Positions 1 to 20,189 of a stretch of DNA of 64,000 nucleotides are shown piece after piece (position 1 is the stretch's first letter; every line of letters begins with the position of its first letter). This DNA comes from Ylistrum balloti (Eukaryota). The notes under the pieces were generated by a model. The model ran no database searches and was not told the origin of the DNA. It worked only from the letters and a program-made list of their open reading frames with translations. The DNA lies in assembly GCF_031769215.1 (NCBI RefSeq), contig NW_026781979.1, positions 62,001 through 126,000 of the forward strand, in the 5' to 3' direction. The position numbers and the translations under genes were made by a program.

Positions 1-1539
1 AATTTTACAAATTTCATAGCTAGAACAGATGATGGTATCGCAACCCCAATCTTTCCAGGTAAGATAGGTATCAAGATGTCTGTACAAATACAAGTCAAGC
101 ATACAAGGTGGCTTTGTCTCGGGATACTAGTGCTAAGGACATCCGCAAAACATAGCAAAATCAACATAGACTTTAGTTATATTTATGGTAAAATGTTTAA
201 AAACAAGGGGGCTGGACTGGGGTGAGAGGCCTGGTTGCAAAAGTATAGGGATGATATGGAAACGGTCAGGTTCAAATAAACCTGTAACAAATTAGCAGAC
301 CCATACTGCATCAGGTCAGACACCCCTCCATTACATTCATGGTTGTTTTCATAATAAAGCAGCTGAAACATCACAAAACCAGACAACATTCATGGAACTT
401 GCTTTGCTGGATTTTCTTTGGAAGTGTTGCATACTGGGTCTTTCCCATTTAACAAGCAGAGATGGCAAACATTTGCCGTCTCCACTAAGCTAGAGCACAA
501 TGTGCATTTTGGTTTTCTCAAAATCCAAGATACAAATACCCTTTTCCTTTATAAATGAAGACAGGTCACGAAAATGCTAACAGAAAATGGGCTTCAATTT
601 TATTTCTGTTCCCTCTTTTTTGCAAAAAGTGTAATTGTTTGTGCTTCAGAATTTCCAAGAATTTTGGTATGACAAAAATTTCTCCTTGGACATTTTCAAT
701 GCAAAGAAATCAAGATGATACTATTGGAATAGCCATAATCATCATATGATCAAAGATTTTTCTTTTTCCGTTTTTCATGTGGAAATATCAATAGTTTTCT
801 TTCTTTAATAGATTAGTTATCAAAAAAATGAAATTACTAAAGATTGATTTAGTCTTTTTCTCAATTTTTTGGGAAATAAAATTCTGGAGTCAAGAAGAAA
901 CAGCTAACAGGATCTGCCACCCGAGCATGACCAGCAACATTCCGGACTGCAGAGCAAATACAGCAACTGCTACGGCAGGATTTCGAACCCCTGGCAGTAC
1001 ACTCTGCAAGCCCCTCTTTCTCAGCTGTATTCAGCACACAGCATAACTAACACCTTACTGCTCCTACAGCACATGTGAAATAGAAGAAATCATGTGTTAA
1101 TGGAAATGATTGAAGGATTTATTTACAATAAAAATGTGGATGAAGAGTTGCACAATTCTAAAACAGTTCAAAGCATTCAGCATTTTTCTTCTCAAATATC
1201 TTTTCACATTACTTAGAATACATGCATTTTATTCAGTCATTTGATTTCTCAACTTGGAGATACTCCAAGCACAAACTTCTGAAATCGCCAAATCGTAATG
1301 GAACACTACTCTCCTCAATTTTATTCCATTTTTTTAGCAATGAACTTTATTAAAAACAAATGACTTAACGATGTGTGTGGATGAATGTATCTATAAAACT
1401 GGTGATAGTAACCTTTCACTGTCACAAGATCAGCTTGAATGATAGTATGTGCTCAGCCAGTCAATATGGACAGGATAAGCTATGTAGAATGTTGGTCATC
1501 ATTCTTTGACTTGTTATTGATGGTATCAAGATGAATATT

Positions 1540-2388
1540 TCAGTCGTCACCACAATCATCATCATGATTTCTGTGACTTGGTGACCTTGAAGGCGACTTA
1601 GAGATGTCCCTTGATCTGCTTCTGCTGCGACTAACACTCTTGCTCCTGCTATGACTACGGCTGTAACTCCTTGACCTAGAACGACTACGAGATCGTGACC
1701 TACTACGCCTCCTCCTTGATCGTGACCGTGATCTTCTTCCTCTTGACCGAGACCTAGATCTTGATCTTGACCTTCTGAAAAATAAAATAGTAAAATGAAA
1801 AAAATATTACGGTCTATTCTGATCTCACTTCTTTAACAATGATTTTCTACATACAGTTCCATTGTATAAACGAAATCATCCTTGTAATGTTTTTCGTTCT
1901 TTTTATTTTAAAATTAATGACAAATCTCTTCTATATCGTAAGGTAAAAAATCTATTATTGTAACTGTACTCATCTCAAATACGATTGTTCTATTGATAGA
2001 ATAAAGTTATTGATCAGTAAACGGTGCTGTTGTTGAACCCTTACCGTGACCGTCCATACCCATAGCTCCGGCGTTGGGGTGCCCTACTCCGGTGCGATTC
2101 GTTAGGACGTCCGTATCTCGCCATCTGTACTCTCAGTTCCCTTCCATCCATGATAGCGCCATCCATACTATCCAGTGCGTCTTCTGCGTCGCGTTTGTCA
2201 TAGTAACGTACGAAGGCGAATCCTCTACTTTCTCGAGTGAATCGGTCGCGGGGAATGTACACATCTCCAACGTCGCCATATTTTTCAAAAGCACGCCGCA
2301 GATCTTCCGGCGTCGTTCTGTAGGTCAAATTGTCCACTTTAAGGGATGCCATTCCCTCAATGTCGGGCGGTCCTCGACCATAACTCAT
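1540..2388 (-). CDS. SRSF2: Serine/arginine-rich splicing factor 2 (SC35), 2 coding exons, 192 aa
   Basis: Exon 1 is 2388-2045 ([25 protein letters not shown]... RRM with RNP1 RGFAFVRY), donor GTAAGG. Exon 2 is 1774-1540 after a tttcag acceptor and encodes an RS domain ending ...[11 protein letters not shown]. Total 579 nt, frame continuous. The N-terminus matches the characteristic SRSF2 [21 protein letters not shown]. Confidence 0.97.
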
Positions 2389-2782
2389 TGTAGAATATTA
2401 TCAATACAAACCGATGAAAATTTATCGAGTAAATGCCTAAAACTTCCCAATATTGTTCCGCCTTTGTCACGCAACGTGGGTACAACGCTTCCCCTTCGCG
2501 CTCATGCGACAATGACGTCATATATCGGAAATCTGCCTCAGTTGTACGTTTGTATTGGAAGCATTTGGATATCGAGCGTATTTTCTACTTAGATTAATGG
2601 CCAAAGCAAAAGTATTTACTTTGTCGTTCAAATAGAAAATTATTGTTAAAAATGTTAAAATAGATCAATTAAATAAGTATTAGAATGACAATAAATATTT
2701 CTGATCATATTATTAGAAAAACAAATATTCGTTTTTATTCGGCCTATAGTAAAAATCATGTGACACTTTTATTTTGAACAAG
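2389..2782. promoter_or_regulatory. Bidirectional promoter region, SRSF2 / MFSD11
   Basis: 394 nt between divergent ATGs, locally CpG-rich. Palindromic CRE TGACGTCA at 2513-2520 and a CGGAAA (ETS-like) motif just downstream. Confidence 0.75.
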
Positions 2783-5700
2783 ATGGCGGAAGAAGGTGTA
2801 TACGATGTTAGGCTGGTTAATATAATACTTGTAGGATTTGCATTCATGTTTCTATTTACAGCGTTTCAGACAGCTGGAATGTCAGAAGTAAGTGTGACTT
2901 TGATGCGTCTGCAGTTATTATATTCATAACCAATTGAGATAAACGAACACCTTAAAATGCACCAATGTTTACATGAGATAGTCAAATCGCCCCTTTTTCG
3001 ACGTGTAAAACTTGTTTCACAATTTGTGAAGATACAAGTTACATTAGCAAAATAAGATCCCAGTCATCTATAATGGGTATCTGGGTTATAAACCCCACAA
3101 TCATGTCACGCAATACGTTAAAAATATTGAGTACCCCATCTGAGAAATTTTGACTCGAATGTGCAACTTTGTACAAATTGGCTTGACTTCGCTTAAAGTC
3201 AGGTCACTTTAAAGGATTGAAATTCTGACAAAACATAATGTCCTATTGAAACTATCCAGTTTCCTCTTGTTCTACGTGACGTTTGACATTTTGACAGACT
3301 ACATATGTAAGGATGTTCATTTAGGCTGATGAACTTTAATTTTGACGTGTGTACATAGAAATAGTAAAAGCAGATTTAGGTTAGCTGGACAGGTCAAAGG
3401 TCTCTAAATATTGTTTCGAGACTTGCCTGGTGTTAAAAGGACTGAAGTCAAAATTCCTCCTATGTCAAATACAAAGTGACCACTGCTCTTAATTTTATTT
3501 TGTTATATAGCATCTTTAAATGCTATTCCATCAGTTATTTTATTAACAACTTCAGTATCATAGTGTGTAGTGTTTGGGAAAATGAAGTCCACATCTCTGA
3601 ATGTTGTTATATCAATTACTTTTTCAGACTGCTGTTTTGAAGAGTGCTCGAGAGGATTCCAATGGAACATTTACTGGAGATGGTTCTATCAGGTTTAAAC
3701 CTACTATTAATATTGTCCTTGAATATTTTGCTAAAGTTACTACCATTGTCCGGATGCTTTTGGTCTCTGCCATGAAGATTTTTAGCCATATAGATTTCCA
3801 TTTTCTTATCTATTTATTGTGACAAATTAAACTGAAACAAACAATGCTAAACTGTGTTTTTGGAAACTCTGGAGTGGCAGATAAGATATATTAATGACTT
3901 GCAACTGAATATTGTGAAGAAATAGATTTACTACTCTTAAATTGTCCTTAGAGTTATTGCTGATATTCAAATGCATTGTTCATACTTTTGTTAGTTCATT
4001 TCACACTTATTAGTATTATCTGCTAAGCTAATATTATGTTATGATAATGAAATGAATCTGTCTCAAATGATGTACATTGTGTTATTGTATTTCACAGCCT
4101 TGGTGTGATATATGCAGTTTTTGCAGCTGCAAACTGGATTGCTCCTCCCATAGTCAGTGTTGTAGGTCCAAAGTACACCATGTTTTTGGGTGCTATTCTT
4201 TACTTGTAAGTACCACTTCCTACATTTATTCCTTACACAATAGATAAGGATGGTAATGTTAATTGTAATGTTGTATGTTATGAATTAAACTTGTGTGTGG
4301 ATGGTAACTGAAAAAGATATTAGCCTGGAGCTGATGGACATCAGAACTCTGTCCCTTTAAAATTGAGAGAAACTGTTTCCTATCATGTTTTGTTGACAGT
4401 TTGTTTATCCTGTCCTTCTTGAAGCCGATGACATGGGCATTGTATACAGGGTCTGTTTTGGTGGGCCTTGGAGCAGCAAGTAAGTATTAGTTAGTATAGA
4501 CTAATTTGAAGACAACTATTCCTGCTATAGAATGAGAATAACTCATTTAGTGAATTGGTGTGATTAAGATGAAATGTTTAGGTTATCACAAGTCACAGAT
4601 TCAATGTGTTAAGATCTATAGATCAGACCACAGGTACAATATATAAGGTATCAAATCCTTACTAGTTCCAATCACATATTTTGTACAATGTACATATACA
4701 ATGTCCAATATTACAAATGTACTATCATTGATCTTTTTTAAAGATTTCATTTGATTTGTGTAATAATAAATATATTTTGTGTAAAGCACATGTTATGTAA
4801 TATAAAGAATTACACTTATGTTAAAATGGACAGAATTCTCGAAGTGCTGACTTGAAGATGTGTTCATTACCTGTGCCATATTTTTTCTTTGAAAAAATTC
4901 TTATCTTTCTCATTCAGAAATACTGTCAGATTGCATTTAAACTTTCCTAAGATTAAGAAACCCAATTCAGACTTTCATATTTTATTTTAAAACCTAAATG
5001 TATTCTATTTTTTGCACATATTGACCAGTTTCATTGACAGTTTCCCAAGGGTAAATGTTATGGATTTTATTGCAATTACAATCGTACATTAAAGTTGAGT
5101 TTTCAGAAATTAATTTTGCTGTAATTTTGCATTTTAGTTTTATGGACAGCCCAGGGAAATTTTCTCACGATTAATTCAGATTCCAATACAGTTTCCCGAA
5201 ATAGTGGAATATTTTGGGCACTACTTCAATGCAGGTTAGTACATATACTACTACAGGGATGCTTTGACTACGTTCACGAACTACACAACAAAAATAGACA
5301 ATATTCCTTGTTTTTGATGAAATCAACAGTTCTGTAAGTTTATTGATTTGGATGGAAACTACTGAGTATATTTTCACAGATGCTCAGTTGTTTAAATTGC
5401 TTTCATCCATTGATCATCTATATAACCCTCCAAAGACCCTTAAGTAATTCTTGTTATTGTTGTTTCTTGAGAAGTACTTTACAGATCTTTACCATTTTCA
5501 CTTATGTATTCTCCTTGGTCCCTACTATTGCCTTTTCAATATTTGGAGACTGATCAGAACAATTAAAATGGCCAAGAGGTGTCCAACTTTGATCTTGGCA
5601 GTTTAAGTTTATTACCACTCTATTTCTGTAGAAAAAAATTGGATTTTTTCTTTCATATATGTAGGGTTTTCTTGACTTCTTAACCTACCAATGAAAGACT

Positions 5701-8700
5701 TGCATGTAATTACATTGTGATTTATATTGTAAAGCCTTATAGGGGGTAATTATTCTTTATTACAGCTTGCTGATAGGAAATATTTACAGTTACTATGTGC
5801 TGAAAGGAAGAGAAAACATTGACAGTAGCGAGAGGTTTCAACTGTTTGCTGGTTTAAGTGGGGCTGCTCTTGTTGGCGTACTTCTGTTTCTTACCCTACG
5901 TAATAGGCGCAACACAGACGCAGAAAACCTCATCAATCTGAACTCCAGGTATGCATGATAAAACATACAATAGTAAAAACTTAAATGTGGTCGTGATCCT
6001 ACCTCTATCATGTAGTATGTGCTTACTGGGTATGAAAAGTGTGACATAATCATGCTTTTAACCTTTGATAGTTTATTTGGAATATTACATTGAATGAAAA
6101 CATTTGCCATTATTGGACAAATATCCAGGCTTTTGCATTGAAATTGATGTAGATATTTAATGGTATTTGCTTAAACATCCAGGTTTTTAGGATGACCTAT
6201 AGCCATTGTGTTTTGTGAGTTGCTGTGTACTGTCCGTCATGCATAAACTTTCCATTCAAATGACATCTTTGTTAAATTGAATGACCTTGACTGACTTTCT
6301 AGGTCACATGTCATATATGTCAGAATCTTTGAATGACTTTTTCTCAACATCCAAAATGTCAATGGTGCTGACATTGGACTTGTTATATGCTTGGATGAAG
6401 GGCTACCAAGTTTTGTTAAAAATGAAGGACTTTGACCCACTTTCAAAGTTACAGATGTCAAATGTGTTAAAATGTTTATATGATGTCTTCGCAATAAACA
6501 AAAGATCCATGGTGATGATATTGAGCCTGTGATTGGCAGGGAGGAAGAGCTACCAATTTTGTAAAAATGAATGACGATCCATTTTCAAGGTGACAGGGGA
6601 CAAATGTGTAAAGGAATTTATAAAAAGACTTCTTGTCAACAACCAAAAGGCCAAAAGTGCTCATATTGAAGGCTACCAATTTGGTTCATATTATTGACCT
6701 TCACCATTTTTCAAGGTCACAGGTGTCAAAATCTTTTAAACGATTTCTTCTCAATAACCAAAAGGCTTAGGATACTGATATTGGGCCTGTGGCATGCTGG
6801 AATGAATGGTTACCAATTTTGTTCATGTTATCAACCTTTTCATTTATTAAAGGTCACAAGGGTCAAATGTGTTAAAATCTTCAAACAACTTCTTCTCGAT
6901 ATTGAAAAGGTCCAGGTTGTTGATATTAGTTCTTTAACATGAGTGGATGAAGGGCTACCAATTTACTCAAATAATTGACCTTGACCTGTGTTTAAGGTTC
7001 CTAGGGTCAAATGAGTTGACATCTTAAAATTTCTTTTTCAAAGCAATATGTTCACAGTAATGGCATTTGTGTAGTTGCTTGTATGAATATGATTTCAAGT
7101 TTGAAAAAATGTTTTCATGAACCAAAAATGTCTTCTTTGTAAGCTGTAGAATAGTTGACCAGTTTATTTTAGACGTATTTGGCCTCTTTCATATATAGGT
7201 ATTTATACTGTTAAGGTCTATGGGTCTCTTGTTTGAGAGACACAGACCCTCCTGCTGTTTTCTATGAGACATAGCATGTAAGATGCAAGTATGTGCATCT
7301 CTTAAAATAACACAATCAAGATTATATATCGACGATTCTCACAGATCCAGCCCTAAATATATGCATACTTCTACTTAGAATTGTCAAGGAGGTGTGGTTT
7401 CAGTTTGTCACAGTTGTAAGAAAATGCACCACAAATTTTCATAAGGATTTTTTTAGTGTTATATAAATATATAAAAAGTGATATTTAAAACTGTTGTCAT
7501 TTTCACTCTATTTGTGTTTCAGTGGTACACAATCAGAAGGTCCATTGTCTGCTGTTAGTAAGTATTGCGCAAAAGGGAAAGTAACAAAACAGTATTCAAA
7601 GTTTTGATACTTCAACACAAAGTAAACATCAAATGCATTAAACCATATCTGGTGATGACCAGTACCTACTAGATCAGGTGTAGATGAGTTGAAATAGTGA
7701 TATCATTTAGAAAATGTTTATTCATAGTGTGTATGTTATGGTATAGTATAATGACATTTAAAGTGGTTCAAATTAGAATCCAACAAAAACAACAAACTGC
7801 ATATGTAATCAACTTTTGACATAGCAATAGGTTAAAAAACCAGAATGCCAAAAACATCTTCAAGAAAGTAGATTTTAACCACACAGGATAAAAGCGTATT
7901 TGATTTCTTATTGATGTTTTGACGTATGTCTCTAGTTTGACAAAATACAAAAGTACATCTCAAAACAGTTTTTAATGATTTAAGGATATAAAAACAACTG
8001 ATTTGCATCTCCTAGTATTGACCACATTTTACTCGTTCTTAGGCAGGGCTGATTTCATATTGTCTGGTTATGACATCGTAATGCATCTATTTTCAGAAAG
8101 GTCTTTTCATCTTATGAAATCCCGTGAAATGCGTTTGCTGAGCGTTGCCATAGCCTATACAGGTAATGTATCCCTGATATTTATTGATAAAGAGTGTTTT
8201 TCATTCACAGCAAATGGCACTATTGAGATGGCTGTGTCATTTATTGGCCTATTACTTATAGTTATACCTCTAGATGGAAGTCTTCATCAGGCCAGTTCAA
8301 ATGGTGCCACTGAGCTAAAAATTGGTGGGAATGTTAAGGAAAGGTAGCCAACAAAGTGTTGTTATTTTATTACCTTGTCAGAACTTCGATACGGCAGTCA
8401 GGGAGGCCATTTTGTAAAATGATTGTGCAATCATGGTTTTCCTATGCAACACCTATTTCAAACTTCTCAAGTTCACCAGTCGGATTGAGCTCCAACTTTA
8501 CTGTCGAAAAATAAGTAACACTTGTCACAGTTTCCTACTCCTCACTAAAACTACCAGCTGCATTACGGAAAACAGCTAAGTAAGATTTCATTCAAAGTAG
8601 AAAAAAAAAACTTCTCCCTGTTGAAGGCATTATCAGGTCACAGATAATTGATAAACATAAACAACAGGGACAAATAAGTCAATGCCTACAAATATTACGT

Positions 8701-11700
8701 TACATGGCTGCTGTCATCAATCAGATTGCATAAAATCTTCAATGATAAGTTTATAAAGCTTACCTTCTAAGAGCATTTTTCATCCATGACTCAGCACTTG
8801 GATCTTTATTAATGTATTTGCCACTGTTTTATGTAAATTAAGAAATTGGATGTTATGCTAAAATTCAAGCTCCATCGTCATGTAACCTTTGCTTTAATGA
8901 ACAAATGAAATCCTCATCAGGGGACCAGCTTGTTTTAATTGCAGTATCATAATAAATTAAGCAGTCACTTTGTTATATTACCACACAGGTGTAGAACTGA
9001 CATTCTTCAGCGGAGTATATGGTTTTTGTATCTCCAACAATACACATTTTGGTGATGACTCCAAAGGGCTGATTGGAATATCAGGGATCTTTATTGGTGT
9101 AGGAGAAATTTTAGGTAAGTTGTTTTAAATTGGAAGTATTGGAGCAGTGACAGTTTATACTGATGACTTTTAACTACACTTGTGAAAAATGTATTCAGGG
9201 ATTGAAAAATTAGATAATAAAGCTTGAATTTGAAGTACTGTTTGAAATATCAATTTTGAACATGGATGATCCAATAGGTGGCGCCATGTTTGGACTGTTT
9301 GGGAAGAGGACCAACAAGTATGGACGAGACCCTATAGTGGTGCTGGGATATGTCTTACATATGGTGTGCTTTTTCCTCATCTTCATCAACATGCCAAGTG
9401 ATTCAACATTCAATCATACCTCATCTGAATCTGCAGCAACATATCTTAGTCCATCAAGGTAAGGTATACCATTTTACCAAGTCTTTCCAGGTAAACTGTA
9501 CCATTCTATCCAGTCTTTCCAGGTAAACTGTACCATTCTACCCAGTCTTTCCAGGTAAACTGTACCATTCTATCCAGTCTTTCCAGGTAAACTGTACCAT
9601 TCTACCCAGTCTTTCCAGGTAAACTGTACCATTCTACCCAGTCTTTCCAGGTAAACTGTACCATTCTATCCTGTCTTTCCAGGTAAACTGTACAATTCTA
9701 TCCAGTCTTTCCAGGTAAACTGTACCATTCTACCCAGTCTTTCCAGGTAAACTGTACTATTCTACCTGGTCCTTCCAGGTAAACTGTACCATTCTACTCA
9801 GTCCTTCCAGGTAAACTACACCATTCTACTCAGTCCTTCCAGGTAAACTACACCATTCTACTCATTCCTTCCAGGTAAACTACACCATTCTACTCAGTCC
9901 TTCCAGGTAAACTACACCATTCTACCCAGTCTTTCTAGGTAAACTGTACCATTCTACCTGGTCCTTCTAGGTAAACTACACCATTCTACTCAGTCCTTCC
10001 AGGTAAACTACACCAGTCTACCCAGTCTTTCCAGGTAAACTGTACCATTCTACCTGGTCCTTCCAGGTAAACTGTACCATTCTACCCAGTCCTTTCAGGT
10101 AAATTACACCATTCTACTCATTCCTTCCAGGTAAACTACACCATTCTACCTGGTCCTTCAAGGTAAACTGTACCATTCTACCCAGTCTTTCCAGGTAAAA
10201 TACACCATTCTACCCAGTCTTTCTAGGTAAACTACACCATTCTACCTGGTCCTTCTAGGTAAACTACACCATTCTACTCAGTCCTTCCAGGTAAACTACA
10301 CCATTCTACCCAGTCTTTCCAGGTAAACTGTACCATTATACTTGGTCCTTCCAGGTAAACTATACCATTCTACCCAGTCTTTCCAGGTAAACTGTACCAT
10401 TCTACCTGGTCCTTCCAGGTAAACTATACCATTTTACCCAGTCTTTCCAGGTAAACTGTACCATTATACCTGGTTCCTCCAGGTAAACTATACCATTTTA
10501 CCCAGTCCTTCCAGGTAAACTGTACCATTATACCTGGTCCCTCCAGGTAAACTATACCATTTTACCCAGTCCTTCCAGGTAAACTGTACCATTCTACCTG
10601 GTTCTTCCAGGTAAGCTGTACCATTATACCTCTGTCTGGTATCAGCCTACATAAATCCCTTTATGTACAGGTAAGCTACACCAGCATACCTAAGTCATTC
10701 TATGTAAGCTATTCCAAATTATTTCATTCAGGTAAATTATACCAAGTATAGATACAAAGTTATTGGTATTTTTTGTGGTCAATTGATGTTTGTTCAACAT
10801 TTTATCAATAGTTATTGAATGTGTACAAATGAGTTAATGAAGAAAAATGATATAAGCACACAGACGGATATTAACGAGCAGGTCTATACAATTTCCTTCT
10901 GTCTGCTGGTGCATCATTTTCTGAAGTGTATATCATGATCAGTTTTTTCTGCTATTGCCAAAAATCAAAATTTACATGCGGGTACATTTTGGCATAGCCA
11001 TTTGTTTAGTATGTACCGGGTATATATACCCTACACAACTACATTCATTAATTTTTCCTGTATTAGTCTGTCATTTAAATAAAATTGTAAACATATAGGA
11101 CAGATAGTAATTAAGATTTAAAAAGTTATTGTGATTTGTTGTTCTAATTATTCTTTTGAAATCTGTTTTTCAGTAAAGATGTTGCCATTCTGTGTTCCTT
11201 TTTACTTGGCTTTGGAGACAGTAGTTTTAATACGCAGGTAAGGTTTTCACATTTAATTGTATGTTATAGGTTACAAAAGTAAATATTTGGACTCCAACCT
11301 ACGTGCTTAAACTTTATCGAACATTCTTGGTGTAGTGCTGATACTTATTTCGAACTGGCATGTAATCTAATGAATAGAGTGGATACTGATATATATCGTA
11401 GGTAATATTTGGGGTCGGGTGGGACAGTGGTAATGCATTTGCCTTTCACCTAGCCATCTGGGGTTTGATTCCCAGAATGGATGTGATAAGGTAAGGGGTC
11501 ACCTGCCCGACCACGTGAGTTTTCCCTGGGTACTCTGGTTTCCTCCCACAATAAGACGCCTCTCATACTTACATCCGGGCTACTCAGAGTGATTAATATA
11601 AGTTGGAAAAACTTGCTTTGCAATTGTTGTAAGATAAATAATGTTTATTATTACATATTATCATTATTGTAGATAATGAAGCCTATTGTTGTCTAATATT

Positions 11701-12699
11701 AACAATAAATGGTACATGTCTATCGTAATAATTTGTCCAGACTAAGAAATAGAAACACTAGTATTTGATATTTGTTTGTTTACAAGTTTGTAACTACCAG
11801 TAGTTACTAGTGAAAGGAGATATTTATGTGACTTTTTAATAGACACATGCTCTAGCAGTTTTTAATGCCTTGTAGTGAGTTTATATTTATACAGTAATAA
11901 ACCCATCAGTATCCATTGCTGGTCTGTAGAATACCAATATAGGTTTTTCTTTGTCGTGTGATACCCACTTTCTTGACATATTTCAGGAAAATGGTGATGA
12001 TATTTCTTTACTGATTTCAATAAAACTACATCTATGATTGTCCTATTGGATCGAGAATGTCCTCAAATCAAAGAGTAAAATGTCATTAGTTTAGAAGAAT
12101 CCTGGTTTTAGAATATAAACGACAGAATTTGACATTTCTCTTTTTTTAAATTTGTCAGTAAAATGTTCAGATTTTTCCTGCTCTTAAAATAATGTGTAAC
12201 AAACTAGATGAATCTATCTTTCTGTGAGTAAACCAGTGTAATCTCTTATCTATATTTTCCCTTAGATTGGAAGAAAAAATTATGTGATAATTATATTTCA
12301 ATGTTTTGCTGTATTGCTTTCAGATATATTCCATCTTAGGGTTCATGTTTCCAGAAGACAGTTCCCCGGCATTTGCACTGTTCAAGTTTGTCCAGGTATG
12401 TTAACCTGTCATAAACATTTGATAGCACTTTAACAGTAGGCAATGATATACAGTATACAGTGTAAGTATTTTTGAAACTCCACTGACAGAACTAAATATT
12501 TCCTTCCTCTGTTGAAATTCTTTTGTTTTTGTTACAGTCTGTAACAGCGGCCGTGTCATTCTACTACAGTACTCACCTGTTGTTACACTGGCAGCTCCTT
12601 ATCCTGGTTATCCTCGGGACACTAGGCACATGGTGTTTCTGTCTGATTGAATGGAGTGCCACTAAGGCCTTCAGGGCTGGCTACCAGTCCATCGGATGA
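2783..12699 (+). CDS. MFSD11: UNC93-like MFS transporter MFSD11, 13 coding exons, 447 aa
   Basis: Exons 2783-2887, 3628-3692, 4098-4205, 4400-4479, 5138-5234, 5766-5948, 7523-7557, 8097-8162, 8989-9114, 9278-9458, 11174-11237, 12324-12395, 12538-12699. All introns GT-AG, phases consistent, 1344 nt. Motifs FMFLFTAFQT, LWTAQGNFLTINS, RNSGIFWALLQ, YTGVELTFFSGVYG, LLGFGDSSFNTQ, PAFALFKFVQS and C-terminal GYQSI match MFSD11. Confidence 0.96.
6184..7233 (+). mobile_element. Non-autonomous Helentron-like element (HINE) with internal ~120-150 bp subrepeats, MFSD11 intron 6
   Basis: Begins ttttaggatgacctat and ends ctgttaaggtctatgggtctcttgtt (hairpin-type 3' terminus). The internal motif gaagggctaccaa...caaggtcacaggg recurs about 5 times. 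Confidence 0.55.
9459..10630 (+). repeat. 32-bp minisatellite, about 36 copies (ccaggtaaactgtaccattctacccagtcttt)
   Basis: Direct inspection. Starts at the MFSD11 exon 10 donor. Confidence 0.95.
11411..11650 (+). mobile_element. tRNA-derived SINE with V-domain-like core
   Basis: Degenerate A box (cagtggtaatg) and B box (gggtttgattccc), followed by gttttccctgggtactctggtttcctcccaca (V-SINE-like core) and an AT-rich tail. Related copies at 16745-16930 (-) and about 62190-62375 (-). Confidence 0.7.
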
Positions 12700-13158
12700 C
12701 AATCAAAGGTTGGTCATCTTTCATCTGATTTACAATCAGTAAACAGCAACTGCTAATATCAACTGTGCTTTCAGATTTGCAAAATAAAAAGTGAAGTTAG
12801 CTTGCATGGATTTGGAAGGACGAAAAAATATAGAGGTAAAACAAAAATTCTAAGGAGGATGGTTATGATATTTATTATTTAGCTGCTGTAATGATGTACA
12901 TAATTGAATAAGATAATGAAAGAACAGGGTAGGTATTTGATATTTAAAAAAAACATTTAATACAATGACAGTATTTTCAGTTTCCAAACATAATATGAAT
13001 GCATTTTGAGGATATCATGGGTATTATGCTTGGAAAATGAACTATAGGACTGATCACTCTAATATGTCTGTCAGTGTATGTAAGTTATTTAATTACAACA
13101 TCTAATGCATTTGATTTTGAATTTTAATTGAACTAAATCTGATGACTATCTCTTGCAG

Positions 13159-13266
13159 GTTGACAGCCAGGATATCACCTGTGCTGTTGACAAGGACCTT
13201 GCAGTTGAAGATAATGTGATATTACCGACAGATTCTGCTAGAGATGAGGATAATGTGATGACTTGA
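13159..13266 (+). other. MFSD11: MFSD11 downstream (3'UTR) exon carrying a 35-codon in-frame readthrough extension VDSQDITCAVDKDLAVEDNVILPTDSARDEDNVMT*
   Basis: Donor AAG|GTTGGT at 12708/12709, 9 nt after the TGA. Acceptor tctcttgcag| at 13158/13159. The spliced product is in frame with the stop and open to TGA at 13264-13266. Confidence 0.65.
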
Positions 13267-13962
13267 CCACAAAGATAGATATATTGACATAAGAAGTTGA
13301 TGTTTTACTGTGATATATAAGTATTAAAAAACAAGCGGTGGTATTGTATGTAATTATCTTTATGTGGGTTTTTATGATTTAAAATTAAAACCAGAATTCC
13401 AGGTCCAAGGATGTACCTGCATTGGTTCAGCACTACTAATTTATATGTCAGTGGTTACCAAATCAAATCATGTAGTCATTTAGATAGTATTGTATTCTCA
13501 CTGCCATTGTACTACCAGGATTAATGGTTTCTCAAGGACATTGCACCGATTGGAGGAAGTTTGGTCACATGACCAGGATATTTTGTTTAAGGCCTAGCAG
13601 CGTTAGATACATTTTTTATTAAAATTTGTTTGTGTGGTATGTTATTTCATTCATACAGGACTACCAGATGTTGACAGTTTACTGTAGCTTGATATGTTAG
13701 TTTTATGATTGACAGGGAGATATATTTTATTGTGCTTCTTTCCCAGTTTTGTTTTTTTGGGTTCAGCTACACAATTTTTTATTTTAGATACAGTACTTGT
13801 ATATGGTTATTACAAATGTCTGTATTTCTCATGTTTGTATAAGTTCTTCATTCAGTACAGGTGCTTTGAATTATGTAGCCATTGGTGTCAGAAAGCAATA
13901 AAAGCTAATATCTGTCACACTCACCTTCATTATCACACAGGAAAGGTAATATCCATCCACAC

Positions 13963-14076
13963 GGGTTACATAGGTAGACGGGGCACTCTCTATACCCTAT
14001 ACACTCACCAGCAGGATTCAGTTACATAGGTAGACGGGGCACACTCTATACCCTATACACTCACCAACAGGATTCA
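13963..14076. repeat. Two-copy tandem duplication (about 57 bp)
   Basis: gttacataggtagacggggcac..tctataccctatacactcacca.caggattca occurs twice in tandem. Confidence 0.85.
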
Positions 14077-16357
14077 TAGATCACATTACTGTGTCATTTT
14101 TATTGTACATGAATGTAGTTTCTGATAAACGACATACCAATAATATACCTCAAGTTAAAAAGTTGATAATATGGGACAGGTACATTGTTTTTGACTGGCT
14201 TGAAGATGAAGCAGTGTTTTGTATATTTCTTGCCAAATATACTTTTGTTGGTTTATGTTTCATGTACTCAAACCTGACATACTGAACATGTGTTGTTAGT
14301 TCACTTTTTCTCTTACTGATAAAGTGCTCATGGGCACATTTAAACACTTTAACAACACAAATTTCACCTAGTGATTAGCTGTGTTCATGTGGGATTTTAA
14401 TGGGAGATAAATTTAAGAAATGGTAATTTTTAATATGCTTGATGTTTTTATATTTCATAGGTTGATATGAAAATTGTTGTGTAATTGGTGATAAAGAAAC
14501 AAAGTGATACGATGCCTCTGTCTCTGAAAGGTTTTTGTTCCATGTTTGGTCAGTGCATCATTAATTCATATTATGATGATGGAAAAATATAATCCAAAAG
14601 TTATGATTGATGGAGAAATCTGAACCAGTTTGAGGAGTGTGAACTTTTAGTTATTGGTAGCAGTAAGTTTTGTGATAAGTAGTCCTTTTATTCATTATTT
14701 CATGCTGGCATGCTTACCTGTTATATTTTTTATGTGGAAATTGAGAAAATGGAGAGAGAAAAATGAAAGTAGAAGAAATAAATGATGAGAAAACAGGATG
14801 TGTAAATTAGCATGATAAATTGGATGAAGATTGTCATTCCTCACCATAGAAGTGTTATGTTTTACAGGTATTGATATGAAAGAGAGTATTAGATATCTGG
14901 GCAATTTCTCTGGTTTTTGTACTTTATTTGCTGGATTTATCGCTGTGTGAACAGCCAGGGCCATTTAGAGGCATGATCTCCTTTTAATAGAGGATAGCTA
15001 CCTCACTGAAGGACATATGGGAGGCCCATCACATGCAATCCAGAGGATCTCTTTACCTAAGGTTACATGGGCCAACACTCTCATGAACTGAGCCCCATTT
15101 TGTGTCTGGAAGGAAAAGCATTGTGATAGGTAGCAGAAGAGGACATCTGTCATCTTGTGTGGGTTAGAAAAGAGGTAGACCTTAAGTATTTATTCAGTAT
15201 TAAAAGTACTTGATGTATATGAGATGCTATTTTCCCCATGACTAGTCAGTAAACATATCTTGATTAATCTTTATTCCAAAAGACTTACTATTGACTGCAG
15301 ATATAATGTAGCACATGATAAAGTTTTTGTTTAGTTATTCAGCTATTCCAGGTTGATAATATACAAAAACCAACAATATTGGAGAATTGTAAGCCAGATT
15401 CTGAAATATTTGTTAAATGAATTTGCAATGGTTTTATTATGAGCACTCTAAATTCTGTTATATTTTTCCTGCAGTCTGCCTCTTCCATTTAATTTCATTA
15501 TTTGAATACACCAGAACAAACATTGTTTTTATTTTGGATTCTTTGATGAAATCATTTAATCTAGATCATACAAAGTTATATATCATAGCAGCTAGTACTT
15601 CTTTCACTGCAATACCACAGCTTGTGTTGTGATATTTTTATATGGATCATAAGGAAGGGATGACAATATTTTGTTTTGAATTGTAATTGTATAAAAACCT
15701 CATGTTCTCCACAAATTCTTTTAAGTCTGACAGCATCAGAGAGGTTCATAATTAGGTGATGCTAAGTTGTTTGTCAGCTTTTATTATATCTTAGGATGTG
15801 CTGATTTCATGTGATAGCTTTTAGTTGTGGTATGATGTACCTCTTTGTACATGAATGATGAGCAAATATGAAACCCTAGTTGGTTGTGTAGACTTATGTA
15901 TTAGGTACTTAGTAAAACTTTTTGAGTTACTGGTCATGTACTGTAAAATTTTAGAATGTCCTACTTTCATGGGTGGGACATGTCTGTTTCAAATTTGTTA
16001 TATCAGATCAAATCAACATAACAGATATATAAGTACCATTTTGCACTATGGTGACACTTTCGGTTTTTTTCAGTTTTGATTGGTTCTAATGGCAGCAAAT
16101 GTAATGTAAATGCTTGTTAAGAGTTCATATTTGACAGGTAGTATTACATACTGTATGTATAAGAGAACAAATATGTATGTATATTGCTGGGAATATGTAT
16201 ATTACTGTGTGTATATGAAATGAAGTTGTGTATTATTGTGTATGTATGACTCTTTGAGGGGTACATATTTGGAAATTAATCTATTGGGTGAAATGGTCAA
16301 GGAATTTAAGGTTTTAAATCTTAGCTATTTCATGGTTTAAGATTTACAAGTACATTG

Positions 16358-16660
16358 TACTGTGAAGTAATTGTCTACAGTTTTACTGTGAAGTAATTGT
16401 CTACAGTTTTACTGTGAAATAATTGTCTACAGTTTTACTGTGAAGTAATTGTCTACAGTTTTACTGTGAAATAATTGTCTACAGTTGCACTGTGAAGTCA
16501 TTGTCTACAGTTTTACTGTTAAGTAATTGTCTACAGTTTTACTGTGAAATAATTGTCTACAGTTGTACTGTGAAGTAACTGTCTACAATTTTACTGTGAA
16601 GTTATTGTCTACAGTTTTACTGTGAAGTAATTGTCTACAGTTTTACTGTGAAATAATTGT
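16358..16660. repeat. 26-bp minisatellite, about 11-12 copies (ttttactgtgaagtaattgtctacag)
   Basis: Direct inspection. Confidence 0.93.
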
Positions 16661-16744
16661 TTCCATTTTTCAAAACTATTGTCTTTGTATCTGTATCTTA
16701 AAATAACCTGTAAACTTTTTAATTTCATGACATTTACATAATAA

Positions 16745-16930
16745 TCTAATAATTATATTGATCACTCTTGTCGGCCCGATGGAAGTACAAGAGGTTTTAC
16801 TGTGGGAGGGGTACTTGGGGGAAAATCAAGGTGGTTTAGCAGGTGGCCCCATGCCTTTCCATGTCCCATCTGAGAATCGAACCCAGGTTGCCTAAGTGAA
16901 AGGCCAATGTGTAAACACTGCATAACTTGA
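16745..16930 (-). mobile_element. tRNA-derived SINE, same family as 11411-11650, antisense copy
   Basis: The reverse complement reads cagtgtttacacattggcctttcacttaggcaacctgggttcgattctc...ctcccacagtaaaacctc...gagtgatcaatataa, colinear with the 11411 copy. Confidence 0.7.
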
Positions 16931-17625
16931 CCATCCTAAATCTATATATGCTAGGCTGTAGTATGATGTGGCAACAGGTGTCTCCATACTCCAATATCAA
17001 TAGATTTTTGGCCATTAAATCTTTCTGTAGAATGTACTGGTCAGTAGATTTCAATGATCATAACCTCTGATATGACACTTTTCGTGACATTCACAATGTG
17101 AATTGTGATCTCTACAGAGGTGATTTTGTAGTGCTAGTTAGTTTCAGTACTGTTCTGTACTTTTTTTTGTGAGATTTAACTTTCCTGATGATTTATTTGG
17201 AAACTTGTTCACAAAATTCAATTCTTTATGAATATTAATTTCATAGACATCTTGCTTTCACTGTTGAAATGGGTGGTGTATGTCCTATTGATCACAGTCC
17301 TGATATATGTAAAAGCAATATTGGTGACCTTTAAGTGCACAAGGAAATTAAGTGATCTACATTCAGGTCAAGTTCCTTATCACACACTTTACATATTGTT
17401 ATGTGATAGTAATTTTTCCAAAAAAAATCAAATTTCAAATATAGATATTATATATAGATTTTTTGATACAAGATTCATGACATATTTGATAAATGTCTGT
17501 ATAAACATGATATATGTACTTTAGCAATATATCTTTAGGGCTACATATAAATCCTCAGATTTGTTTTTTTATTTCTCTCAAATACTTTACAATCACATGA
17601 CATGTAGTTCTGCATTGCTTTATAT

Positions 17626-18506
17626 TTTTAGCTCACCTAGTCCAAAGAAGCGGCGAGCTAATTGCTATGGCATGGCTTCTGTCAGCTTTTTACTGAAGAT
17701 TGCTACTAGTCATAAATGACTAAATAGATTTTGACCAAATTTGGTCAGAAGCATCCAAGGAGGAAGGAAAACCAAGTTCATATATGTGATTGCTTCGCCA
17801 CTACCAGGGGCCAAAAGGGGAAATTTTGCAAGTTCTTATAAATCCTAAAAGGACTGAATGGATATTGCCCAGAGTAGAGCCAATAGGGGAAATAGAATAA
17901 ATTAATCAAAATCCTACTCCTATAGGAATTTGAAATCAATATTGTATAAATGCTAGGACTTGGTCCCCTTGGGCAAGAGGAGCAGGGTCTAATAATCTTT
18001 TAAATTCTATACTCCTCCAGCAGGAAAGATTGGATTTTGCTCAAATCTGGTCTGAAGTATGCTTGGGTGAAGGGAATCAGTTGTGTATAAACAGTGAATT
18101 GCAGGGAGGTATGGCCCCATTGGGGAAATACAGCTAATTCCTTACATCCTGCTCCATCTATAGGAATGAATGAATATTGCCAAATTTGGTCTGAAGCATT
18201 CTTTGCTGAAGGTAATCAGTTTTGCATTAATGGTAAGTCTTGGCTTCTTTGCGAGAGAGGGGCAGGGCCCAATAGAGGATATAGAGCAAATTCTTTCAAA
18301 TTCTACAAGTTCTTAAAAAACCTTCAGTACAGGGATATTGTTTGGTCTTAAGCAGTTTTATGAATAGTGAATATGACTTCAGTTTGACCATAAGACTAGG
18401 ACCAAATTATATCAGAAATTATTTGTCAGTTTTGAAATATAATTTATTAATAGCTGAATGGCTAAGTTAGCCAGGTGAGCGATGCAGGTCTCTTAAGCCT
18501 CTTGTT
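17626..18506 (+). mobile_element. Non-autonomous Helentron-like element (HINE)
   Basis: 5' end tttttagctcacct and 3' end aggtgagcgatgcaggtctcttaagcctcttgtt. Subterminal inverted repeat gctcacct/aggtgagc, 3' hairpin and T-rich flanks, with internal degenerate subrepeats. Confidence 0.7.
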
Positions 18507-19510
18507 TTATGTGTATCTTTTTATCTGTAGAGACAACAATTGCAGTAGTAAAGATTTCAAATATCGGATACACCTCTTGTATGTTATTATAATCCCCCCA
18601 GATCCTTACATGTAACCGGATTGATATACACCTGTTGTTTATCATTATAACCCCCTTTAAACATATGTTTTGTTCAGTTCTATAGTAAAGCTGTTTTGAT
18701 GACTTGATGCCTCAGTAACTTGCCGATTTGTACACCAAGGTAGAGCACTGGACCATTGTTTTTATTATGTTGCTTTGTAACACCAGGAAAGGCCTTTGTG
18801 TTTTATCTTATTTTCATACATTCCATTGTTCTATAGTTACTATCATGACAACGGTTGGTTTTCAGCTAGTAGACGTATATTTGATGTAATATTTGTAAAT
18901 TATCCTGTTTTGTACATAGACAGGTGACAATATGTGATGACAGCTGTGCAATAGCTTTATTGTACTCATATTGGAAAGAATACACTACTTTCATTATGTT
19001 TTACCTTGAGATTATTTCACACTTGACCACAATAAATTGGTGAACAAACAGTATTCGTTTTGTTGTCACTCTGTATAACTGTGATATAAACAATTATTTT
19101 TCCTGATCATTCCTAGCAATGCTGTCATTGTGCAATCTAGCCAATCAGAATTTGAGTTACTTGACATCGCCTCAGGGCAATTTTGTTGTTACAGCGTAAG
19201 GAAATAAGCAATACCAATCTGACATTAGTGTAAGCGTGCGCTTGAGGACTAATCATTGATCTTTGGTGACTTGTCTCTTTTCATTTCTATTAATTATGTC
19301 AATGAGATGATGAGTGGCACATTATGTGAAAAATGTTTCAACCTAGACTCCAGTGAGGGAGAATTATTTTTAGACTCCCAAAAATTTTTAAACATATTAA
19401 ATTTAGACTTCAAATTTCATGTGATGACAGCCATGAAGAGGGAAGACTCGAATAGATTTGAAGTGAGTATTCATGGTTGCAATGTCCAATTTGAGGATTT
19501 GATATACATA

Positions 19511-19758
19511 CCAGGCCCCACTTGTATAAAACATCTCAACTTGAGATTTCCTCAAGCCCAGATTTTCCTCAGCTAATATCTCCTTGAAAATATCTTTTAT
19601 GAAAATTCCTCAAGGAATTTCAGGACATCCTAGCCGATGACTTCCTCCTGTTCCTTGAGAAAATTTTATACTAGCCGTTTTTTGAGGGGATATCAGCTGA
19701 GGGAAATCTCGACTTGAGGAAATCTCAAGTTGAGATGTTTTATACAAGTGGGGCCTGG
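19511..19758. mobile_element. Palindromic MITE, about 47-bp perfect TIRs, TA target-site duplication
   Basis: ta|ccaggccccacttgtataaaacatctcaacttgagatttcctcaag ... cttgaggaaatctcaagttgagatgttttatacaagtggggcctgg|ta. Confidence 0.88.
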
Positions 19759-20189
19759 TATTAGTAATTCAACATTACATTAACTGATTGAATTTACATT
19801 GAACCTGGTGGGTGTCCAGCTGCACTTACAGGGTGATTTGTATTAATTTGTATTTGTTCAATCTCACAATGAATGTCTTAAAATGCAATATAAAAAAGAA
19901 ATGTGTTCCCTCACTGGAATCTCTGATCATGTTATTTGAACTTTCATACACTTTAAGTGTACTATTCATATGAAAACACAAATAAGTGTTGGAGTACTCA
20001 ACAAAAGTTGTTATCAGGATGCAAGGATAGGCCACCATTACCATTTACAGAAACCTCAGCACTTTTAACAAATTCATTTGGATGAATCTTGTAGACAAAG
20101 GTCAAGTACTGGAATACACTTTTGTATTTTAAAAAATAAGTTGCCAGATTCATGGTCTTAGGTCTACAGAAATTATGCGTCAATACTTT

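What the first reader, a model, noticed from the sequence alone, without database searches (positions are those of the whole stretch)
12691..13266. Splicing-assembled stop-codon readthrough cassette in MFSD11 (UGA-CARYYA, then a hairpin 9 nt downstream, then an in-frame acidic tail)
Seen, four coincident features. (1) The stop context is GGA TGA CAA TCA AAG. (2) An intron starts 9 nt after the stop (12709-13158). (3) The next exon begins exactly with a stem-loop GUUGACAGC-CAGG-[AUAUCA]-CCUG-U-GCUGUUGAC (13 bp, including two G-U pairs and one bulged U, 13159-13191). (4) The frame stays open for 35 more codons, giving the extension X-QSK-VDSQDITCAVDKDLAVEDNVILPTDSARDEDNVMT* (486 vs 447 aa). This tail is acidic, has a repeated EDNV, and contains EDNVIL, which resembles an acidic dileucine sorting signal. 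Known: UGA-C is the leakiest stop context, CARYYA is the TMV-type readthrough hexamer, and stem-loops starting roughly 8-12 nt after UGA stimulate readthrough in alphaviruses and Drosophila headcase. The junction is too close to the stop to trigger NMD. Inference: hexamer and hairpin are joined only after splicing, so intron retention or removal could switch a C-terminally extended, differently sorted isoform of an orphan transporter on or off. I know of no report of MFSD11 readthrough.
Basis: partly seen in the sequence, partly recalled or inferred. Interest (0 to 1): 0.92.

Follow-up and report, generated by a model that had tools for sequence, protein, structure and literature searches.

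The report
Possible stop-codon readthrough signal in scallop MFSD11
In four scallop genera the MFSD11 transporter gene keeps the same layout, a UGA stop, a splice site 9 bases later and a next exon that opens with a stable RNA hairpin and stays in frame, which fits programmed readthrough of the stop but has no RNA or protein data behind it yet.

Summary
The window encodes Ylistrum balloti MFSD11: 13 coding exons translate exactly to XP_060064212.1. The stop TGA lies at 12697-12699. A donor follows 9 nt later, a good acceptor sits at 13158/13159, and a 13-bp hairpin (-17 kcal/mol) occupies 13159-13191. The frame then stays open for 35 codons.

The new result is comparative. Mizuhopecten, Pecten and Argopecten keep the same layout:
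- TGA-CAA, with the donor exactly 9 nt after the stop.
- An acceptor 0 or 3 nt before the same hairpin.
- An acidic open frame of 28-38 codons after the stop.

Intron length varies from 403 to 1047 nt. Alignment gaps inside the open frame are all multiples of 3. The hairpin is unique in the 648-Mb genome.

Weak points:
- CARYYA and the "EDNVIL" motif occur only in Ylistrum.
- Substitutions in the tail are not clearly codon-like.
- Covariation rests on four species.

Best reading (about 0.42): UGA-C readthrough of the alphavirus/headcase type, helped by a hairpin that reaches its 9-12 nt spacing only after splicing. Main rival (about 0.33): a conserved hairpin with another role and an untranslated frame. 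I found no SECIS and no editing duplex. The same scan flagged another readthrough candidate (Prrx) elsewhere in this genome.

The parts
12324..12395 (+). MFSD11 coding exon 12 (..IYSILGFMFPEDSSPAFALFKFVQ). It starts and ends in phase 0.
   Evidence: Exact spliced match to P0154.
12538..12696 (+). Coding part of exon 13 (last transmembrane segments, C-terminus ..GYQSIG).
   Evidence: The C-terminus GYxxI(G)-stop is conserved from corals to vertebrates.
12697..12699 (+). First stop codon, TGA, followed by C.
   Evidence: TGA-CAA is present in all four scallops.
12700..12708 (+). 9-nt linker CAATCAAAG (Q-S-K if translated). This is the end of exon 13.
   Evidence: The linker is exactly 9 nt and free of stops in all four scallops (CAACGAAAG in one, CAACGACAG in two).
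12709..13158 (+). Predicted intron of 450 nt lying after the stop, GT..AG.
   Evidence: Donor (A/C)AG|GTnnGT and acceptor tracts are conserved in four species. Intron length varies (450, 403, 1047, 592 nt) and the interior does not align. It has not been confirmed with reads.
13159..13191 (+). 13-bp RNA hairpin with a 6-nt loop and one bulged U. These are the first bases of exon 14.
13159..13263 (+). 35 in-frame codons of the putative extension (acidic tail).
13207..13261 (+). In-frame 39-nt spaced direct repeat GA(A/G)GATAATGTGAT(A/G), the 'EDNV' repeat, found only in Ylistrum.
   Evidence: Read directly. It is absent from the other scallops.
13264..13266 (+). Second in-frame stop, TGA.

Best explanation
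The scallop MFSD11 mRNA probably carries a programmed, low-level UGA readthrough signal.

**Shown.** The canonical protein ends at GYQSIG-UGA. The stop is followed by C and, 9 nt later, by a conserved splice donor. The next exon starts, 0 or 3 nt after its acceptor, with a conserved stable hairpin. The MFSD11 frame stays open for 28-38 further codons that encode an acidic tail.

**Inferred.**
- Removing the intron places the hairpin 9-12 nt after the UGA.
- At that distance the hairpin would sit at the ribosome's mRNA entrance while the stop is in the A site. This would favour a near-cognate tRNA over the release factor.
- A fraction of MFSD11 would then receive a cytosolic acidic C-terminal tail.
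- Any sorting role for the tail is a guess.
For: - **The window is Ylistrum MFSD11.** Its 13 exons translate exactly to XP_060064212.1.
- **The layout is shared by four genera** (Ylistrum, Mizuhopecten L001, Pecten L002, Argopecten L003). All have GGA TGA CAA, a donor exactly 9 nt after the stop, and a polypyrimidine acceptor 0 nt (two species) or 3 nt (two species) before the same 33-nt hairpin. Intron lengths are 450, 403, 1047 and 592 nt.
- **The hairpin folds everywhere.** Energies are -14.5 to -19.8 kcal/mol with z from -3.5 to -5.1, and it remains in the MFE of the spliced context.
- **Pairing is maintained.** 50 of 52 cells are paired. One pair changes A-U to G-C, and the three one-sided changes keep pairing as G-U.
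- **The hairpin is conserved and unique.** The acceptor-plus-hairpin block is the best conserved block downstream of the stop in every pairwise comparison. The hairpin is unique in the genome.
- **Frame 0 stays open.** It runs 38, 28, 37 and 31 codons after the UGA. The minimum in frame 1 is 15 codons and in frame 2 is 3. The product of the shuffle probabilities for the post-hairpin parts is about 7e-4.
- **Gaps preserve the frame.** Gaps inside the open part are 3, 15, 6 and 6 nt, the acceptor shift is 3 nt, and the Ylistrum duplication is 39 nt. After the second stop, gaps of 1, 2 and 4 nt appear.
- **Acidic tails are normal for the family.** Other molluscs carry short acidic tails directly after GYQxIG within the normal ORF: Aplysia LDDQ, an unnamed sequence DEEEK, Solemya PTEEDE. 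Two oyster mRNA contigs also show UGA-C followed by an acidic in-frame stretch of 32 or 23 codons.
- **The geometry matches published cases.** Spacers of 7-12 nt and stems of 10-14 bp with a 1-nt bulge are described for alphaviruses, plant viruses and Drosophila headcase (PMC3159437). In insects, RNA structures occur in about 10% of readthrough candidates against under 1% of other transcripts (PMC5100048).
Against: - No scallop transcript contig could be reached (cluster members are all from genome annotations).
- **Substitutions in the tail are not clearly codon-like.** Identical plus synonymous codon pairs are 31% in frame 0, against 21% and 29% in the other frames. The hairpin codons vary equally at all three positions.
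- **Frame 1 is also open** for 37 and 34 codons in two species.
- **Covariation is not significant** with four sequences; 388 of 500 shuffles do as well.
- **The context is UGA-CAA**, not the CGG, CUA or CUAG contexts known to be most efficient. CARYYA is not conserved.
- **The signal is not shared outside scallops.** Saccostrea has TAA with a donor after 5 nt, and Mytilus has a donor after 1 nt.
- **The 3'UTR holds other conserved blocks**, so a conserved element there is not exceptional.
Confidence: 0.42

Rival explanations
1. The hairpin is a conserved non-coding element at the start of the last exon. It could be a binding site for stability, localisation or translation control, or an element that helps recognise the acceptor. 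Under this reading the open frame behind the stop is not translated. It could be a slowly decaying relic of an ancestral coding tail, or a by-product of purine-rich GAN-GAN sequence acting as a splicing enhancer.
For: - Conservation is concentrated on the stem, while the loop and the tail vary.
- There is no third-position bias in the hairpin codons, and the codon signal in the tail is weak.
- Other colinear conserved blocks exist further along the 3'UTR.
- The hairpin starts exactly at, or 3 nt from, the acceptor in all four species, which would also suit a role in splicing.
- A donor right after the stop is seen in other molluscs as well, without this hairpin.
Against: - It does not explain why the frame stays open for 28-38 codons in all four genera.
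- It does not explain why all gaps, the acceptor shift and a 39-nt duplication preserve the frame.
- It does not explain why three species end the frame at an aligned position.
- It does not explain why UGA-C is kept.
- The 9-12 nt distance from the stop would be a coincidence.
Confidence: 0.33
2. Exon 14 is a coding exon of an alternative transcript that skips exon 13, joining exon 12 to exon 14, both in phase 0. The frame would then be kept by ordinary coding selection without any readthrough. The stop would lie close to the exon 13 end only to avoid nonsense-mediated decay.
For: - Exon 12 ends in phase 0 and exon 13 is 171 nt long (57 codons), so skipping it keeps the frame.
- Standard practice assigns a coding signal beyond an exon break in the second ORF to alternative splicing (PMC5100048).
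Against: - Skipping exon 13 would cut the protein at ..FKFVQ, inside the second-last membrane segment, and would remove the last one. This is an inference from MFS topology.
- NCBI lists a single protein, without an 'isoform' label, for Ylistrum, Mizuhopecten, Pecten and Argopecten.
- It does not explain the conserved UGA-C or the hairpin spacing.
Confidence: 0.1
3. The UGA is recoded by another route: selenocysteine insertion, or A-to-I editing of UGA to UGG.
For: Only the conserved UGA and a nearby structure point this way.
Against: - No SECIS or any other Rfam family was found in window 12400-20000 at E up to 10, nor in the three orthologous loci at gathering score.
- No complementary partner for the stop region was found in the flanking pre-mRNA beyond shuffled controls in any of the four species.
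- The hairpin does not include the stop codon.
Confidence: 0.03
4. It is pure coincidence: an ordinary stop, an ordinary intron after the stop, and a chance hairpin and open frame.
For: A single 35-codon open frame in AT-rich DNA is not rare; the shuffle probability for Ylistrum alone is about 0.07.
Against: Three further genera, which played no part in the selection, keep the hairpin, the splice sites, the spacing and the frame. The hairpin block is the top conserved block downstream of the stop.
Confidence: 0.04

Closest known systems
Structure-assisted UGA readthrough ('type II': alphavirus nsP3/nsP4, tobra-, peclu- and furovirus replicases, coltivirus VP9, Drosophila headcase)
   Same: A UGA stop with a 3' C. 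A stem of 10-14 bp, often with a 1-nt asymmetric bulge, starts 7-12 nt after the stop (PMC3159437). Here the stem has 13 bp with a 1-nt bulge and a spacer of 9 or 12 nt.
   Different: - It is a compact 6-nt-loop hairpin, where the known cases have a long-range stem with a loop of 100-270 nt.
- The context is CAA, not CGG or CUA.
- It is a cellular gene of a mollusc.
- The stop and the stem lie in different exons, so the spacing exists only after splicing.
- Readthrough has not been measured.
Conserved readthrough genes of insects found by comparative genomics and ribosome profiling (PMC5100048, PMC3840789)
   Same: Conserved TGA-C, an in-frame second ORF kept open across species, and enrichment of conserved RNA structure within 100 nt of the stop.
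   Different: - Only four species are available.
- No PhyloCSF-type signal could be computed, and the codon substitution pattern is weak.
[quoted passage not shown]
TMV-type (type I) readthrough, UAG-CAR-YYA
   Same: Ylistrum has CAAUCA after the stop.
   Different: The stop is UGA, not UAG. The hexamer is CAACGA in the three other scallops, so it is not the conserved element.
Mammalian UGA-CUAG readthrough genes (e.g. LDHB, MDH1, AQP4; PMC4132726, PMC4359377)
   Same: A cellular gene with UGA-C and a C-terminal extension that could carry a targeting signal.
   Different: The context is CAA, not CUAG. Those cases need no downstream hairpin.

Membership tests
UNC93-like MFSD11 (MFS transporter) | Full-length similarity to MFSD11 orthologues, with UNC-93 (PF05978) and MFS_1 (PF07690) domains. 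| tested here: met
   The window's 13 exons translate exactly to P0154, XP_060064212.1. Its precomputed Pfam domains are PF05978 and PF07690. The C-terminus aligns with vertebrate ..DYRSI-stop.
Structure-assisted UGA readthrough (type II) | A UGA stop followed by C. | tested here: met
   TGA-C is present in all four scallops.
Structure-assisted UGA readthrough (type II) | The 3' triplet is CGG or CUA. | tested here: not met
   The triplet is CAA in all four.
Structure-assisted UGA readthrough (type II) | A conserved stem of about 10 bp or more, starting 7-12 nt after the stop. | tested here: met
   In the predicted spliced mRNA the 13-bp stem has a spacer of 9 nt (Ylistrum, Mizuhopecten) or 12 nt (Pecten, Argopecten). 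This depends on the unverified splice.
Structure-assisted UGA readthrough (type II) | Compensatory changes support the stem. | tested here: inconclusive
   There is one A-U to G-C pair and three wobble-compatible changes, with 96% of cells paired. With four sequences the shuffles do as well in 388 of 500 trials.
Structure-assisted UGA readthrough (type II) | An in-frame second ORF under coding selection. | tested here: inconclusive
   The frame is open in all four species and all gaps are multiples of 3. The synonymous versus non-synonymous pattern is no better than in the other frames.
Structure-assisted UGA readthrough (type II) | Measured readthrough product that depends on the stem. | not testable with these tools
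   This needs Ribo-seq, mass spectrometry or a reporter assay.
TMV-type readthrough (UAG-CAR-YYA) | A conserved CARYYA hexamer after the stop. | tested here: not met
   Only Ylistrum has CAAUCA. The other three have CAACGA, with G at the fifth position.
Selenoprotein (UGA = Sec) | A SECIS element in the 3'UTR. | tested here: not met
   There is no Rfam SECIS match in window 12400-20000 at E up to 10, nor in L001-L003 at gathering score.
Acidic dileucine sorting signal [DE]XXXL[LI] | The motif is present and conserved in the tail. | tested here: not met
   Ylistrum EDNVIL has I-L where L-[LI] is needed. It has no counterpart in the other three tails. Only an acidic core (D/E)-E-(E)-D-x-V/I is shared.

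The most novel reading that the evidence does not exclude
Scallops make two MFSD11 proteins from one spliced mRNA by programmed UGA readthrough, and the stimulatory hairpin reaches its working distance from the stop only when the intervening intron is removed. This would be a readthrough signal assembled by splicing and kept since the pectinid genera split. Splicing or retention of that intron could then set how much of the long, acidic-tailed form is made.
Probability: 0.35. Interest if true: 0.75.

Novelty: new variant of a known kind. Interest (0 to 1): 0.62.

Why it matters
Conserved, structure-assisted readthrough of cellular genes is well documented in insects and in a handful of mammalian genes. 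My paper searches returned nothing describing it in a mollusc cellular gene, and no paper that links MFSD11 with readthrough.

If confirmed, this case would extend the phenomenon to Lophotrochozoa. It would also show a readthrough signal split by an intron, so that splicing and decoding are coupled. That matters for genome-wide screens, which routinely discard second ORFs that contain an exon break.

It would further give an orphan transporter a second, C-terminally tagged isoform that can be tested. Even if the frame is not translated, the hairpin is a strongly conserved, genome-unique RNA element at an exon start and is worth testing.

Tried and rejected
- **RNA-seq check.** The look-up of sequencing runs returned one run (X1, type unknown, Logan contigs, 556 M letters, 0.58 of the words of 12500-13700).
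  - I made no query from those places afterwards.
  - One search scanned the whole window only as a target of my hairpin model and reported no match in that stretch. Local scripts used the window file as a BLAST subject.
  - The 0.58 share is close to what exon 13 plus exon 14 without the intron would give (about 0.53-0.59). That is only a hint, because the run type and its contigs were never seen.
- **Short transcript fragments of the last exon.** None were found.
- **Selenocysteine.** No SECIS was found.
- **A-to-I editing of the UGA.** No partner duplex beyond shuffled controls was found.
- **Repeat or transposon origin of the hairpin.** It is a single copy in the genome.
- **Homologous hairpin in oyster or mussel loci or oyster mRNAs.** None was found with a covariance model. 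Oyster post-stop folds are not shared between the two species.
- **Oyster extension in Saccostrea or Mytilus genomic DNA.** It was not found.
- **Antisense coding exon.** The antisense frames are not consistently open and ignore the exon boundary.
- **In-frame alternative donor upstream of the TGA.** There is no GT at a codon boundary in the last 60 nt. The only conserved GT nearby (CCA|GTCCAT) is a poor donor and leads into frame 1, which closes after 15 codons in Pecten.
- **Enhanced synonymous-site conservation in the hairpin.** 5 of 7 conserved codons have an invariant third position, against 22 of 39 in exon 13. The difference is not distinguishable.
Full report
**1. What is in the window**

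The + strand from 2783 to 12699 carries an MFSD11 gene of 13 coding exons. A spliced match reproduces the 447-aa protein XP_060064212.1 of the scallop Ylistrum balloti (P0154) residue for residue. Exon 12 is 12324-12395. Exon 13 starts at 12538.

- ...GYQSIG, then TGA at 12697-12699.
- The linker CAA TCA AAG, then a donor AAG|GTTGGT at 12708/12709.
- A polypyrimidine acceptor ending at 13158.
- A 33-nt hairpin at 13159-13191: 13 bp, a 6-nt loop and one bulged U, at -17 kcal/mol, z = -4.45.
- An open frame of 35 codons, ending at the TGA at 13264-13266.

A hairpin this stable is rare. Only four loci in both strands of the 64-kb window reach -17 kcal/mol in a 33-nt frame. The sequence occurs once in the 648.5-Mb assembly.

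**2. The canonical stop is the ancestral one**

MFSD11 proteins from corals, hemichordates, amphioxus, many molluscs and vertebrates end within a few residues of the same GY-x-x-I motif. The TGA is therefore the normal end of the protein and not an annotation slip.

Some molluscs add a short acidic tail after that motif inside the normal reading frame: Aplysia ..GLDDQ, an unnamed sequence ..GDEEEK, and Solemya ..PTEEDE. An acidic C-terminal tail is thus not foreign to the family.

**3. Comparison with three other scallop genera**

This is the main new evidence. I fetched the orthologous genomic loci of Mizuhopecten yessoensis (L001), Pecten maximus (L002) and Argopecten irradians (L003).

All four species share the following:
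- GGA TGA CAA.
- A linker of exactly 9 nt without a stop (CAATCAAAG, CAACGAAAG, and CAACGACAG twice).
- A donor of the form (A/C)AG|GTnnGT.

The introns are 450, 403, 1047 and 592 nt long, and their interiors do not align.

Each intron ends in a good acceptor. The acceptor lies directly before the same 33-nt hairpin in Ylistrum and Mizuhopecten. In Pecten and Argopecten it lies 3 nt before the hairpin. The MFSD11 frame is therefore kept in all four.

The hairpin has these properties:
- It folds in every species, at -14.5 to -19.8 kcal/mol and z from -3.5 to -5.1.
- It stays in the minimum-energy fold of the spliced context.
- 50 of 52 pair cells are standard pairs.
- One position changes from A-U (Ylistrum) to G-C (Pecten), with A·C in the other two species.
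- The three one-sided changes all keep pairing through G-U.
- The loop is the most variable part.

With four sequences this covariation is not statistically significant; 388 of 500 shuffles do as well.

In every pairwise comparison, the block of acceptor plus hairpin plus start of exon 14 is the best conserved block downstream of the stop. Weaker colinear blocks exist 2-3 kb further on, so the 3'UTR is probably long and holds other conserved elements.

**4. Is the frame behind the stop coding?**

Evidence for:
- After the UGA, frame 0 is open for 38, 28, 37 and 31 codons.
- Frame 1 closes after 22, 37, 15 and 34 codons. Frame 2 closes after 3, 12, 13 and 13.
- Dinucleotide shuffles of the part behind the hairpin give probabilities of 0.07, 0.39, 0.10 and 0.24. 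Their product is about 7e-4, although the species are not fully independent.
- In the MAFFT alignment, every gap within the open part is a multiple of three (3, 15, 6 and 6 nt). The acceptor shift is 3 nt and the Ylistrum-specific EDNV duplication is 39 nt. After the second stop, gaps of 1, 2 and 4 nt appear.
- Pecten and Argopecten end at an aligned TAG, and Ylistrum ends close to it.
- The tails share an acidic core, (D/E)-E-(E)-D-x-(V/I), with several third-position differences.

Evidence against:
- The tails are only 40-44% identical.
- Codon-wise substitution counts in frame 0 are hardly better than in the other frames.
- The 11 hairpin codons vary equally at all three codon positions, whereas exon 13 shows 9, 5 and 26 variable sites by position.

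The hairpin is therefore constrained as RNA. The tail, if translated, is constrained mainly in frame, length class and charge.

**5.

- The CARYYA hexamer is specific to Ylistrum. The other three scallops have CAACGA.
- EDNVIL is not a canonical acidic dileucine and is not conserved.
- What is conserved is UGA-C plus a stem that starts 9-12 nt downstream in the spliced mRNA.
- That geometry matches structure-assisted UGA readthrough. Firth et al. report spacers of 7-12 nt and stems of 10-14 bp, often with a 1-nt bulge, in alphaviruses, several plant viruses, coltiviruses and Drosophila headcase (PMC3159437).
- The differences are a compact loop, CAA in place of CGG or CUA, and the intron between stop and stem.
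- In insects, conserved structures occur in about 10% of readthrough candidates and under 1% of other transcripts (PMC5100048).

**6. Rival explanations**

(a) A non-coding hairpin with another role.
- Conservation peaks on the stem, and the hairpin sits at the acceptor.
- Other molluscs also have a donor right after the stop without this hairpin: Mytilus after 1 nt, Saccostrea TAA after 5 nt, and Aplysia directly after its TAG.
- This rival does not explain why the frame is preserved.

(b) Exon 13 skipping.
- Exons 12 and 13 are both phase 0, so joining exon 12 to exon 14 is in frame.
- Jungreis et al. would by default read an exon break in the second ORF as alternative splicing.
- Skipping would cut the protein inside its second-last membrane segment.
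- NCBI lists a single protein per species, without an isoform label.

(c) Selenocysteine or editing.
- No SECIS was found.
- No duplex partner for the stop region was found.

(d) Chance is hard to maintain after the four-species test.

**7. Outside scallops**

- Two oyster-like mRNA contigs from Logan (L004-L007 and L011) show ..GYQSI TGA C.., followed by an acidic in-frame stretch of 32 and 23 codons that differ by a 3-nt indel.
- The whole 3'UTR of these two is similarly conserved. No shared hairpin is seen, and Saccostrea uses TAA. This is suggestive only.
- My covariance model of the scallop hairpin finds nothing in the oyster or mussel loci. Among the loci sampled here, the hairpin was found only in scallops.

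**8. What could not be done**

I built no query from those letters afterwards. and my local scripts used the whole window only as a search target.
- X1 holds 0.58 of the words of 12500-13700. That is near the share expected for exon 13 plus exon 14 without the intron. The run type is unknown and nothing was seen directly.
- No scallop transcript contig was reachable.

**9. Verdict**

I rate programmed UGA readthrough, helped by a hairpin brought into range by splicing, as the best single explanation at about 0.42. A non-translated conserved hairpin comes next at about 0.33.

It would be a new variant of a known mechanism. My paper searches returned nothing describing readthrough of a mollusc cellular gene, and no paper linking MFSD11, or its fly homologue CG18549, with readthrough. 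The same scan holds one other readthrough candidate in this genome (Prrx, UGA-CUAG), which I did not test.

Noticed in passing
window 1464-2397 (- strand) and 2783 (+); L001, L002, L003, L009, L013, L014 upstream of MFSD11: An SRSF2-like RRM gene lies head to head with MFSD11. The loci where the tool reported Pfam hits (Mizuhopecten, Pecten, Saccostrea, Aplysia, Tegillarca) show an RRM_1 gene on the opposite strand just upstream. In Argopecten the upstream gene of matching size and position has no recorded Pfam hit. To my knowledge the human arrangement is the same.
   Followed up: partly
window about 9460-10650: Intron 10 holds a long tandem array. Open stretches of 31 codons recur every 96 nt in all three frames, which implies a unit of about 32 nt containing AG|GT-like sites. 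Another first-stage note flags the same array.
   Followed up: no
L010 26381-26700 (Mytilus californianus): Directly after the MFSD11 stop (TGA G|gtaagg) there are several tandem near-copies of the last approximately 45 nt of the coding exon plus its donor. In some copies the stop is changed to a sense codon (AGA). This looks like duplicated alternative exon ends or pseudo-exons.
   Followed up: no
L009 11738-11800 (Saccostrea cucullata): The stop is TAA, followed by three or four tandem repeats of a unit of about 19 nt that contains CAG|GTACTC donor-like sites.
   Followed up: no
L004 1438-1540 and L011 1069-1140 (oyster-like Logan mRNA contigs): UGA-C is followed by an in-frame acidic stretch (QQEEIEEIGLAVYD.. 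and PQEEKNEEIGLAVYD..) with a 3-nt indel between the two species. This is a possible second readthrough candidate in the same gene family.
   Followed up: partly
window 15422-15895; L001 stop+2527 to +2985; L002 stop+2652 to +3440: Colinear conserved non-coding blocks lie 2-3 kb downstream of the stop in several scallops. They suggest a long 3'UTR with further conserved elements.
   Followed up: no
It lies in intron 11 and plays no part in the finding. No query was made from it.
   Followed up: no
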